Source: Octopus bimaculoides (Eukaryota). Taken from it: DNA of 44,073 nt. Positions 365 to 801 of the stretch are shown piece after piece. Location: NCBI RefSeq assembly GCF_001194135.2, contig NC_068985.1, positions 111,024,838-111,068,910 of the forward strand, in the 5' to 3' direction. Under the pieces are notes generated by a model that was not told where the DNA came from, ran no database searches, and worked only from the letters and a program-made list of their open reading frames with translations. Position 1 is the stretch's first letter. Each line of letters opens with the position of its first letter. The position numbers and the translations under genes were made by a program.

Positions 365-409
365 TTCTTGTCTTATTCAATCATTTTAATTCGTTATGAT
401 AAGTGGTTT

Positions 410-464
410 GTGCCTGATGAATATGTTTGAGATATTTCTGAATATATGAAACTGTTAGTAGCAC
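410..464 (+). ncRNA. Type I hammerhead ribozyme motif (HHR1)
   Basis: Stem I GTGC(410-413)/GCAC(461-464); CTGATGA 414-420; stem II ATATGTTT(421-428)/GAATATAT(440-447), 8 bp including 2 G-U; GAAA 448-451; helix III ACT/AGT with a GTT loop; cleavage triplet GTA 458-460. Confidence 0.7.
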
Positions 465-620
465 GTAAAAACATGTATTGTGTCCTTTAAATAAATAATA
501 TGTATCTCTCACCAGATGGAGTACTTCTTTTGTTGATCTATCTATCACGGAACAATGTGACCGCATGTGGATTGTTGTCGATTTTCTTTCCCTGTCTTTC
601 CTTCTTTGGACTTTTCCTCT

Positions 621-655
621 ATTTCTGACGAAGATCTCCGATCGAAACGTTAAAT
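621..655 (+). ncRNA. Minimal type I hammerhead ribozyme motif (HHR2), Penelope-type
   Basis: Stem I ATTT(621-624)/AAAT(652-655); CTGACGA 625-631; extra A; stem II GATC-tcc-GATC (633-643); GAAAC 644-648; palindromic loopless helix III ACGT; triplet GTT 649-651. Confidence 0.65.
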
Positions 656-801
656 CCTCTTTCTTTTCTTCCATTTCCTTAGCGTCCAATAACGCTGTAC
701 TTATTCCACGTCCTTGCGTTGCTTTTTTCGTGTTTTTTCTTGCTTGTTCATGTTTAAATTGACTATATATATATATATACATATATACACAAATCAATCA
801 A

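What the first reader, a model, noticed from the sequence alone, without database searches (positions are those of the whole stretch)
381..770. Dual-ribozyme cassette: two different hammerheads would excise a 191-nt RNA
Seen: HHR1 and HHR2 are on the same strand with predicted cuts after 460 and 651, bounding 461-651 (191 nt). The segment contains an AATAAA and no ORF, and the unit ends in (TA)n. The two ribozymes are not direct repeats of each other, unlike typical tandem retrozyme monomers. Inference: this could be a non-autonomous Penelope-dependent, retrozyme-like element with two heterologous hammerheads. Double cleavage gives 5'-OH and 2',3'-cyclic phosphate ends, suited to circularisation. 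I am not aware of this arrangement being described in cephalopods. A Penelope-like ORF remnant at 32652-33040 shows potential partner elements exist in this genome.
Basis: inference. Interest (0 to 1): 0.85.

Follow-up and report, generated by a model that had tools for sequence, protein, structure and literature searches.

The report
Two hammerhead ribozyme motifs, octopus retroelement debris
Two real hammerhead-ribozyme motifs lie 191 bases apart in a repeat-rich stretch of octopus DNA, but they look like the tail ends of two different Penelope-type retroelements lying side by side, not a purpose-built two-ribozyme cassette.

Summary
Both hammerhead motifs are present at the stated coordinates, on the + strand, with cuts predicted after 460 and 651. 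They are far beyond chance. Shuffles give about 0.0025 such motifs per window, and none of 719 scrambled-core decoys gives two.

HHR2 (621-655) is a standard Penelope-like-element (PLE) "min-HHR". A covariance model built only from four PLE-linked hammerheads of other animals finds it at 33.3 bits (E 2e-7). HHR1 (409-465) has a complete core but an atypical all-AU/GU helix II, and no model recognises it.

The cassette reading is weaker:
- An inverted repeat (189-290 / 332-515) ends 53-55 nt after the HHR1 cut. In control PLE loci the hammerhead sits 46-55 nt from the 3' end, and one control is also a head-to-head inverted pair.
- HHR2 lies in a separate T-rich block (516-763) that ends at (TA)12.
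- The 191-nt segment therefore spans a junction between two blocks.
- That segment is not structured or tandemly repeated, and HHR2 alone should not cleave.

No second copy of either block could be found, because no cephalopod genome was searchable by DNA. Verdict: a new member of a known kind, of modest interest.

The parts
137..189 (+). 5' part of an octopus SINE-like repeat, cut off where block A begins (context only)
   Evidence: Matches window 40596-40635(-) and 34698-34736(-) and O. bimaculoides locus L003 at 81-94%. Alignment with the other copies shows the similarity stops at about 189.
189..290 (-). Block A, left arm. An inverted copy of the right arm's 3' end. It keeps the HHR 3' half (GAAAC CATCA GTA GCTC on the - strand, 237-255) but lacks the 5' half.
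   Evidence: Self-BLAST gives 191-257 against 446-513 (77%) and 256-290 against 332-364 (91%).
332..515 (+). Block A, right arm. A putative 5'-truncated 3' end of an HHR1-bearing PLE-type element. 366-445 is an 80-nt stretch absent from the left arm.
   Evidence: The arm ends 53-55 nt after the HHR1 cut. Control PLE copies end 46, 52 and 55 nt after their cut.
409..465 (+). HHR1. A type I hammerhead-like motif with a complete core, a 9-bp A-U/G-U helix II (A10.1-U11.1), a 3-bp helix III and a GUA triplet. Predicted cut is after 460.
   Evidence: Chance expectation is 0.0021 per window. Not found by Rfam or by the PLE min-HHR model R1. The hammerhead fold scores -5 to -8 kcal/mol against an MFE of -13.3.
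461..651 (+). The 191-nt segment between the two predicted cuts. It spans the block A/B junction at about 515/516.
   Evidence: Fold -30.1 kcal/mol against shuffles at -32.6, z +0.62. No tandem repeat.
516..763 (+). Block B. T-rich (44% T). A putative 5'-truncated 3' untranslated end of a second PLE family, ending at a (TA)n microsatellite.
   Evidence: Composition shifts at 515/516. No similarity to block A or to the SINE. (TA)n is a stated preferred PLE target (PMC8557442).
620..656 (+). HHR2. A PLE-type minimal hammerhead (min-HHR) with an unpaired A632, a G10.1-C11.1 pair, no helix III (ACGU palindrome) and a 4-bp helix I. Predicted cut is after 651.
   Evidence: Model R1, built from four PLE-linked hammerheads of other animals, scores it 33.3 bits, E 1.8e-7. 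It is the only significant hit in 130 kb. Features are listed. It has the same A-GATC-loop-GATC-GAAACGT design as the control PLE in L012.
764..787 (.). (TA)12 microsatellite that abuts the 3' end of block B
   Evidence: Tandem Repeats Finder.

Best explanation
The locus is retroelement debris in an Octopus genome. It holds the 3'-terminal, hammerhead-bearing ends of two different Penelope-type (PLE or PLE-mobilised) elements lying next to each other.

Block A (189-515) is a head-to-head inverted pair of 5'-truncated 3' ends. The right arm still carries HHR1, 53-55 nt from its end. The left arm has lost the 5' half of the ribozyme with an 80-nt gap.

Block B (516-763) is a 5'-truncated 3' untranslated end of a second family. 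Its minimal hammerhead HHR2 sits 112 nt from an end that abuts (TA)n.

In their parent elements such hammerheads sit once per unit. They are thought to cut tandem or read-through transcripts into unit-length RNAs with 5'-OH and 2',3'-cyclic phosphate ends. Those RNAs can be circularised by a tRNA ligase and copied by the PLE reverse transcriptase.

Here the two ribozymes bracket only a 191-nt chimeric remnant. HHR2 has no helix III and needs a second copy to dimerise with, which is absent. HHR1 has a weak, atypical helix II. Efficient double cleavage at this locus is therefore unlikely.

Shown:
- the two motifs and their non-randomness
- HHR2's membership of the PLE min-HHR class
- the inverted-repeat boundary
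- the architecture of the control PLEs

Inferred:
- that block A derives from a PLE-type element
- that A and B are separate families
- that the two came together either by clustered insertion or by a template switch during one reverse-transcription event
For: - Motifs verified and non-random.
- HHR2 is found by model R1, trained without it, at 33.3 bits, E 1.8e-7.
- Control PLE loci fetched here (L010, L012, L013, L014) carry RVT_1, and two of them also a weak or faint GIY-YIG hit. They have one min-HHR per unit, 170-280 nt after the ORF stop.
- In those controls the cut lies 46, 52 and 55 nt before the copy's 3' end. HHR1's cut is 53-55 nt before the end of the inverted-repeat arm.
- L012 is itself a head-to-head inverted pair with outward 3' ends, the arrangement described for PLEs in PMC8557442.
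- Block B ends at (TA)12, a stated PLE target.
- Composition changes at 515/516.
- The 191-nt segment is unstructured and not tandemly repeated.
- The window shares repeats at 80-94% identity with O. bimaculoides GCA_001194135.2.
- A second, decayed min-HHR lies in O. bimaculoides L006:20157-20202(-). It has no HHR1-like partner upstream.
Against: - No other copy of block A or B was found in the window or in 157 kb of fetched loci. Their status as separate repeat families is therefore inferred from one locus.
- No PLE ORF is in the window.
- HHR1 matches no model and lacks two hallmark PLE-HHR features.
- Hammerheads look sparse in Octopus DNA: none intact in 83 kb of loci. Two independent insertions within 200 nt on one strand is a priori unlikely unless insertion is clustered, which leaves room for a single composite element.
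- Only three control PLEs give a cut-to-end distance. Most are from unnamed ENA assemblies and were reached with a bait sequence written from memory.
- HHR2's distance to the end of its block (112 nt) is longer than in the controls.
Confidence: 0.6

Rival explanations
1. A single composite non-autonomous element. 381-770 (or 189-763) would be one mobile or transcribed unit whose two heterologous hammerheads both cut, releasing a 191-nt RNA that can be circularised.
For: - The two motifs are on the same strand 191 nt apart, far closer than chance or the apparent hammerhead density in Octopus DNA would give.
- Min-HHRs need a second hammerhead nearby to work.
- The topology (upstream HHR, body, 3' HHR) mirrors a PLE with its pseudo-LTR.
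Against: - The inverted-repeat arm, and so a discrete terminus, ends inside the 191-nt segment.
- Control PLEs have identical, not heterologous, hammerheads, one per unit.
- A HHR1 x HHR2 helix III duplex is weak at -1.7 kcal/mol, against -5.5 for an HHR2 homodimer.
- The segment is unstructured, whereas retrozyme RNAs are described as highly self-paired.
- There is no tandem repeat and no second copy.
Confidence: 0.17
2. Only HHR2 is a real ribozyme relic. HHR1 would be a chance fit, created where an AT-rich 80-nt stretch happens to abut a GAAAC...GTA in a foldback or MITE-like inverted repeat unrelated to PLEs.
For: - HHR1 is not seen by Rfam or by R1.
- It has A10.1-U11.1 and an all-AU/GU helix II in AT-rich DNA.
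- Its 5' half lies in a stretch missing from the other arm.
- That stretch has a marginal look-alike at 18840-18900 that lacks the 3' half.
- The hammerhead fold is well above the MFE.
- The descriptor was written after the fact.
Against: - Chance expectation for such a fit within 600 nt of HHR2 on the same strand is about 2e-5 (derived).
- No decoy core gave two hits.
- The cut-to-terminus distance matches the control PLEs.
- GAAAC and GTAGC are kept in both arms while the loop between them differs.
Confidence: 0.12
3. Both motifs are chance matches to a loose consensus.
For: Rfam gathering and E<=10 scans report no hammerhead. Neither hammerhead fold is the minimum-energy fold.
Against: - Shuffle and decoy controls.
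- The independent model hit for HHR2 at E 1.8e-7.
- Rfam is insensitive here: a cleaner type I hammerhead in L002 reaches only 21.5 bits against a gathering score of 34.
Confidence: 0.01

Closest known systems
Minimal hammerheads (min-HHR) of Penelope-like elements (Cervera & de la Pena 2014, PMC4209133)
   Same: HHR2 has the CUGANGA and GAAA boxes, one unpaired nucleotide after A9, G10.1-C11.1, no helix III with a palindromic ACGU, and a 4-bp helix I. It is nearly the same design as the hammerhead of the control PLE in L012 (A-GATC-loop-GATC-GAAACGT). It scores 33.3 bits on a model of PLE-linked hammerheads.
   Different: - No PLE ORF or second pseudo-LTR accompanies it in the window.
- Helix II is only 4 bp, against the published typical 7-8 bp.
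- H17 is U rather than the C seen in the four controls.
- HHR1 lacks the unpaired nucleotide and G10.1-C11.1, and it does have a helix III.
Canonical PLE insertion architecture: partial tandems with pseudo-LTRs and an adjacent inverted 5'-truncated copy (Craig et al. 2021, PMC8557442)
   Same: Block A is a head-to-head inverted pair with outward 3' ends, like control locus L012. The hammerhead lies about 50 nt from the 3' end. There are same-strand hammerheads upstream and at the 3' end of a body. Block B abuts (TA)n.
   Different: The "body" between the hammerheads is 191 nt with no ORF. The upstream and downstream parts are unrelated in sequence, so this is not a pseudo-LTR pair of one element.
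Metazoan non-LTR retrozymes (Cervera & de la Pena 2020, PMC7229834; Li et al. 2026 bioRxiv 10.64898/2026.07.22.740005)
   Same: Small, non-coding, AT-rich sequence with type I hammerheads. Presumed dependence on PLE machinery. Dispersed monomers are known.
   Different: Retrozymes are tandem repeats of about 150-450 bp with the same hammerhead in every unit, and they give highly self-paired circular RNAs. Here there is no tandem repeat, the two hammerheads differ, and the RNA is unstructured.
Rfam Hammerhead_1 (RF00163), classical type I hammerheads
   Same: HHR1 has the type I topology, the full core, a GUA cleavage triplet and a short helix III, as in many metazoan type I hammerheads.
   Different: Neither motif reaches even E<=10 against RF00163 in a 1.1-kb search. 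HHR1 has a 27-nt helix II arm with A-U at 10.1/11.1, and no recognisable loop-loop contacts.

Membership tests
PLE minimal hammerhead (min-HHR) | Catalytic boxes C3-U4-G5-A6-N7-G8-A9 and G12-A13-A14, A15.1-U16.1, and H17 not G | tested here: met
   Both motifs: CTGATGA...GAAA...GTA (HHR1) and CTGACGA...GAAACGTT (HHR2).
PLE minimal hammerhead (min-HHR) | One unpaired nucleotide between A9 and 10.1, and a G10.1-C11.1 pair | tested here: met
   Met by HHR2 (A632; G633-C643). Not met by HHR1 (no extra nucleotide; A421-U447). Features as listed in PMC4209133.
PLE minimal hammerhead (min-HHR) | No helix III, or a 1-2 bp one, with palindromic 15.2-16.2, so that the active form is a dimer | tested here: met
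   HHR2 has A647-C-G-U650, and AACGUU self-pairs at -5.5 kcal/mol. HHR1 has C15.2-G16.2 but a non-palindromic UGUUA/GUU loop, so it only partly fits.
PLE minimal hammerhead (min-HHR) | Significant score on a sequence-plus-structure model built from hammerheads that sit in the 3' ends of RT/GIY-YIG-encoding PLEs | tested here: met
   HHR2 scores 33.3 bits, E 1.8e-7. HHR1 has no hit at E<=10. The four training motifs were picked with a descriptor shaped on the window's motifs. What is independent is their fixed position after PLE ORFs.
PLE minimal hammerhead (min-HHR) | Location in the pseudo-LTR or 3' end of a Penelope-like element | tested here: inconclusive
   No PLE ORF is in the window. The indirect evidence is that block B ends at (TA)n and that HHR1 lies 53-55 nt from an inverted-repeat terminus, against 46-55 nt in controls.
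PLE minimal hammerhead (min-HHR) | Self-cleavage, weak and dimer-dependent in vitro | not testable with these tools
   Needs transcription and cleavage assays. Published single min-HHRs showed no detectable cleavage.
Non-LTR retrozyme | Tandem repeats of about 150-450 bp, each with the same type I hammerhead | tested here: not met
   TRF finds only (CA)n, (TA)n and short AT repeats in 1-1104. Self-BLAST finds no second copy. An N gap at 1105-1435 limits the view downstream.
Non-LTR retrozyme | Unit RNA is highly self-paired | tested here: not met
   461-651 folds at -30.1 kcal/mol, against a shuffle mean of -32.6, z +0.62. The self-pairing requirement is from PMC7229834.
Non-LTR retrozyme | Expressed as linear and circular RNA of unit length | not testable with these tools
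   No transcriptome data were available.
Rfam Hammerhead_1 (RF00163) | Score at or above the gathering threshold (34 bits) | tested here: not met
   No hit at gathering or at E<=10 in 1-1100. For calibration, the type I hammerhead at L002:4838-4884 scores 21.5 bits.
Autonomous Penelope-like element | An ORF with a PLE-type reverse transcriptase and a GIY-YIG endonuclease | tested here: not met
   No RVT or GIY-YIG Pfam hit in 32640-33340. No motif or tblastn hit to a PLE bait anywhere in the window. The same bait retrieves more than 6500 PLE proteins from the database.

The most novel reading that the evidence does not exclude
The A-B junction is not an accident. Under this reading, octopus genomes carry a short non-autonomous PLE-dependent element whose two different hammerheads, one with a helix III and one minimal, cooperate, possibly through a mixed helix III, to release a chimeric RNA of about 191 nt that is circularised. 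That would be a two-ribozyme design not described for retrozymes or PLEs.
Probability: 0.08. Interest if true: 0.6.

Novelty: new member of a known kind. Interest (0 to 1): 0.3.

Why it matters
This extends PLE-type minimal hammerheads to a cephalopod genome, where the searchable literature reports none. It adds one atypical hammerhead variant (A-U at 10.1/11.1, long AU/GU helix II) that current models miss. It also shows that Rfam thresholds overlook this whole class, so ribozyme counts in mollusc genomes are probably underestimates. If the pair proved to be a recurring unit, it would be a new two-ribozyme layout for small circular-RNA-producing retroelements. On present evidence it is ordinary retroelement debris.

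Tried and rejected
- **Rfam.** Scans at gathering score and at E<=10 gave no hammerhead. I kept this as a negative but down-weighted it after the L002 calibration.
- **The 138-aa minus-strand ORF as bait.** I searched it as a protein to fish out other copies. There were no hits.
- **Octopus DNA via Tc1 transposase homologues.** This yielded 83 kb from O. bimaculoides and O. sinensis plus ENA contigs. No copy of 189-763 appeared by blastn (word 7-9) or nhmmer.
- **Metagenome scan for the HHR2 pattern.** It gave two eukaryote-like contigs (L004, L005) with similar min-HHR-like motifs but no PLE ORF and no useful context.
- **Does the truncated SINE at 137-189 resume after block A or B?** That would have dated an insertion. 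It does not.
- **Marginal look-alike of HHR1's 5' half at 18840-18900.** 70% over 63 nt, E 0.04, with no further copies. I treated it as probably chance.
- **U3-A8 core variant scan.** No hits.
- **Whole-window six-frame Pfam scan.** Prepared but not run, because it was too costly for a side issue. A motif grep and a bait tblastn were used instead.
- **Supplementary alignments of the two key papers.** Not held in the library.
- **Octopus PLE proteins.** None appeared among the 120 listed hits of the PLE bait search, so no octopus PLE pseudo-LTR could be compared.

Full report
**What is there**

The window is a gap-ridden draft of repeat-rich eukaryotic DNA with 16 runs of N. Its repeats match Octopus bimaculoides chromosome loci at 80-94% identity. 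Its Tc1-like transposase remnant finds O. bimaculoides and O. sinensis proteins. The "cephalopod" setting therefore holds.

At the stated place, both motifs can be read base by base.

HHR1:
- helix I TGTGC/GCACG (409-413/461-465)
- CTGATGA (414-420)
- a 9-bp helix II made only of A-U and G-U pairs (421-429/439-447)
- GAAA (448-451)
- a 3-bp helix III, ACT-GTT-AGT
- a GUA triplet, cut after 460

HHR2:
- helix I ATTT/AAAT (621-624/652-655)
- CTGACGA (625-631)
- an unpaired A632
- helix II GATC/GATC with loop TCC
- GAAA (644-647), followed directly by the palindrome ACGT and T651

The two predicted cuts bound 461-651, which is 191 nt. AATAAA is at 490-495 and (TA)12 at 764-787.

**Is it more than chance?**

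A descriptor loose enough to accept both motifs finds only these two in the window, on either strand. Three controls were run:
- 2374 dinucleotide-preserving shuffles of the window gave 0.0021 canonical-like and 0.0004 minimal-type hits per window.
- 66219 shuffles of 190-770 alone gave 7.6e-5 and 0.
- Real DNA is richer in hairpins than shuffled DNA, so I also ran 719 decoy descriptors with permuted core letters on the real sequences. They average 0.0028 hits per window and none gives two. The true core gives two in the window and one in 68 kb of other loci.

The descriptor was written after seeing the motifs, so these numbers are optimistic. Even so, two hits 191 nt apart on one strand cannot be put down to chance.

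Rfam sees neither motif, even at E<=10. Rfam is insensitive here, though. A much cleaner type I hammerhead that turned up in an ENA contig (L002:4838-4884) reaches only 21.5 bits against a gathering score of 34.

**What HHR2 is**

Cervera and de la Pena (PMC4209133) defined a minimal hammerhead in the flanking repeats of Penelope-like elements. They listed features that emerged beyond their search pattern:
- a conserved G10.1-C11.1 pair
- palindromic 15.2-16.2
- short helix I

HHR2 has all of them.

To test this with data rather than memory, I wrote a PLE RT+endonuclease bait from memory. It is a lead only, not evidence. It retrieved more than 6500 RVT_1-bearing proteins; a few of those listed also carry GIY-YIG. 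I then fetched five loci. Four of them carry minimal hammerheads:

| Locus | Source | Hammerheads |
|---|---|---|
| L010 | unnamed ENA assembly | three copies |
| L012 | unnamed ENA assembly | two copies |
| L013 | unnamed ENA assembly | three copies |
| L014 | Lytechinus pictus | one copy |

In these loci there is one hammerhead per element unit, 170-280 nt after the ORF stop. L012's hammerhead, ACAG CTGAAGA A GATC TACG GATC GAAACGT C CTGT, is almost the design of HHR2.

A covariance model built from these four motifs alone finds HHR2 at 33.3 bits, E 1.8e-7. It is the only significant hit in 130 kb of window plus Octopus loci. Across the eight distinct motifs, 96% of cells pair and 6 of 7 pairs show compensatory changes. 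The motifs were selected for pairing, so the independent evidence is their position after PLE ORFs.

The same search picked up a decayed minimal hammerhead in O. bimaculoides (L006:20157-20202, minus strand, 15.7 bits). It has no HHR1-like partner upstream.

**What HHR1 is**

HHR1 has the whole core and a good GUA site. Its 10.1-11.1 pair is A-U, it has no unpaired nucleotide after A9, and its helix II is long and weak. Neither Rfam nor model R1 recognises it.

Its context is informative. A self-comparison shows that 189-290 is an inverted copy of 332-515 (191-257 against 446-513, and 256-290 against 332-364). An 80-nt stretch (366-445) is present only in the right arm and holds the 5' half of HHR1. 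The left arm keeps GAAAC and GTAGC, with a different loop between them.

The arms end at about 189 and 513-515, which is 53-55 nt after the HHR1 cut. In the control PLEs the cut lies 46, 52 and 55 nt before the 3' end of the copy. L012 is itself a head-to-head inverted pair of 5'-truncated copies with outward 3' ends. That is the arrangement Craig et al. describe as typical of PLE insertions (PMC8557442).

I therefore read block A as such a pair from an HHR1-bearing element. This is an inference from architecture, not from homology.

**Is it a cassette?**

Four points count against a single unit.
- The 191-nt segment runs across the end of block A into block B (516-763). Block B has a different composition (44% T), no similarity to block A, and its own 3' end at (TA)12, a stated PLE target. 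The internal evidence points that way.
- The segment is no more structured than shuffles (z +0.62) and is not tandemly repeated. Retrozymes are tandem repeats that give highly self-paired RNAs.
- The hammerhead folds are not favoured: -5 to -8 kcal/mol against an MFE of -13.3 for HHR1, and -0.7 against -8.8 for HHR2. A mixed HHR1 x HHR2 helix III is weak at -1.7 kcal/mol, against -5.5 for an HHR2 homodimer.
- Single min-HHRs showed no detectable cleavage in the published assays.

Two points count in favour.
- Intact hammerheads look sparse in Octopus DNA, with none in 83 kb. Two within 200 nt therefore calls for clustered insertion, a template switch between two RNAs in one retrotransposition event, or a true composite unit.
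- I could not search a cephalopod genome by DNA, and no second copy of either block was found.

**Side claims**

The "Penelope-like ORF remnant" at 32652-33040 has no Pfam RVT or GIY-YIG match. It also has no match to the PLE bait that works well on the database. "No ORF" is true of the + strand only. A 138-aa ORF on the minus strand spans the region but has no homologue.

**Verdict**

The PLE link is confirmed for HHR2 and plausible for HHR1. The "dual-ribozyme cassette" is most likely two truncated retroelement ends side by side (about 0.6), with a composite unit not excluded (about 0.17). No hammerhead has been reported in cephalopods in the searchable literature, but minimal hammerheads are known from cnidarians to vertebrates. 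This is a new member of a known kind, of modest interest.

Noticed in passing
window 796-974: A near-perfect palindrome of about 180 bp (arms 85% complementary), MITE-like. Rfam's permissive scan calls it several plant and animal miRNA-precursor families on both strands, which only reflects a long hairpin. Its right end shares an 18-nt stretch (TTGTGTCCTTTAA...) with 477-494 in block A.
   Followed up: partly
window 30823-31938: A frameshifted Tc1/mariner-type transposase remnant (HTH_Tnp_Tc3_2 and DDE_3). It is 82-84% identical in DNA to copies in O. bimaculoides loci L001 and L003.
   Followed up: yes
window 137-189, 34540-34745(-), 40440-40645(-): Copies of an octopus SINE-like repeat (GCTTCTTTCAGTTTCCGTCTACCAAATCC...). 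The copy at 137-189 keeps only its first 50 nt or so and stops exactly where block A starts. The remainder is not found downstream.
   Followed up: partly
It contains an A20 run. What it is remains unknown.
   Followed up: partly
window 19100-19318 (-) and about 11300-11800: By eye, a C-terminal fragment of a non-LTR retrotransposon ORF (HIVSGCSVLA...RHN...), which drew no supporting Pfam hit, and a mariner-type transposase fragment (...QDNARPHTA...PYSPDIAP...), not put to Pfam.
   Followed up: no
L002 4838-4884 (+), ENA ERZ22157276 contig ctg13698l: A clean type I hammerhead (CTGCA CTGAAGA GACC..GGTC GAAAC, 5-bp helix III, GUC) in a eukaryotic contig reached through a Tc1 homologue. Rfam Hammerhead_1 gives it only 21.5 bits, below the gathering score.
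   Followed up: partly
L006 20157-20202 (-), O. bimaculoides CM046603.1: A decayed PLE-type minimal hammerhead (CTGAGGA A GCCTG...CAGCC GAAACGT T) with one mismatch each in helices I and II. It lies next to an (AAT)n microsatellite and a tRNA-like SINE end.
   Followed up: partly
L004 3356-3394 and L005 4241-4277 (JGI metagenome contigs Ga0123355_10143060 and Ga0209780_1007828): Minimal-hammerhead-like motifs with the same GATC-NNN-GATC-GAAACGT design sit in ORF-poor, AT-rich contigs. These are probably eukaryotic DNA inside metagenomes. R1 scores them 17.3 and 23.3 bits.
   Followed up: partly
L010, L012, L013 (control PLE loci): The 26-35 nt "tail" described for PLE insertions is visible: extra sequence at tandem junctions and at an inverted end, absent from the terminal copy. 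L012 is a 100% identical 1554-bp inverted pair, so a very recent insertion.
   Followed up: partly
window 384-445 vs 18840-18900: A marginal similarity (70% over 63 nt, E 0.04) between the 80-nt right-arm-only stretch, including CCTGATG, and a site 18 kb away that lacks the GAAAC...GTA half. No further copies were found, so it is probably chance in AT-rich DNA.
   Followed up: partly
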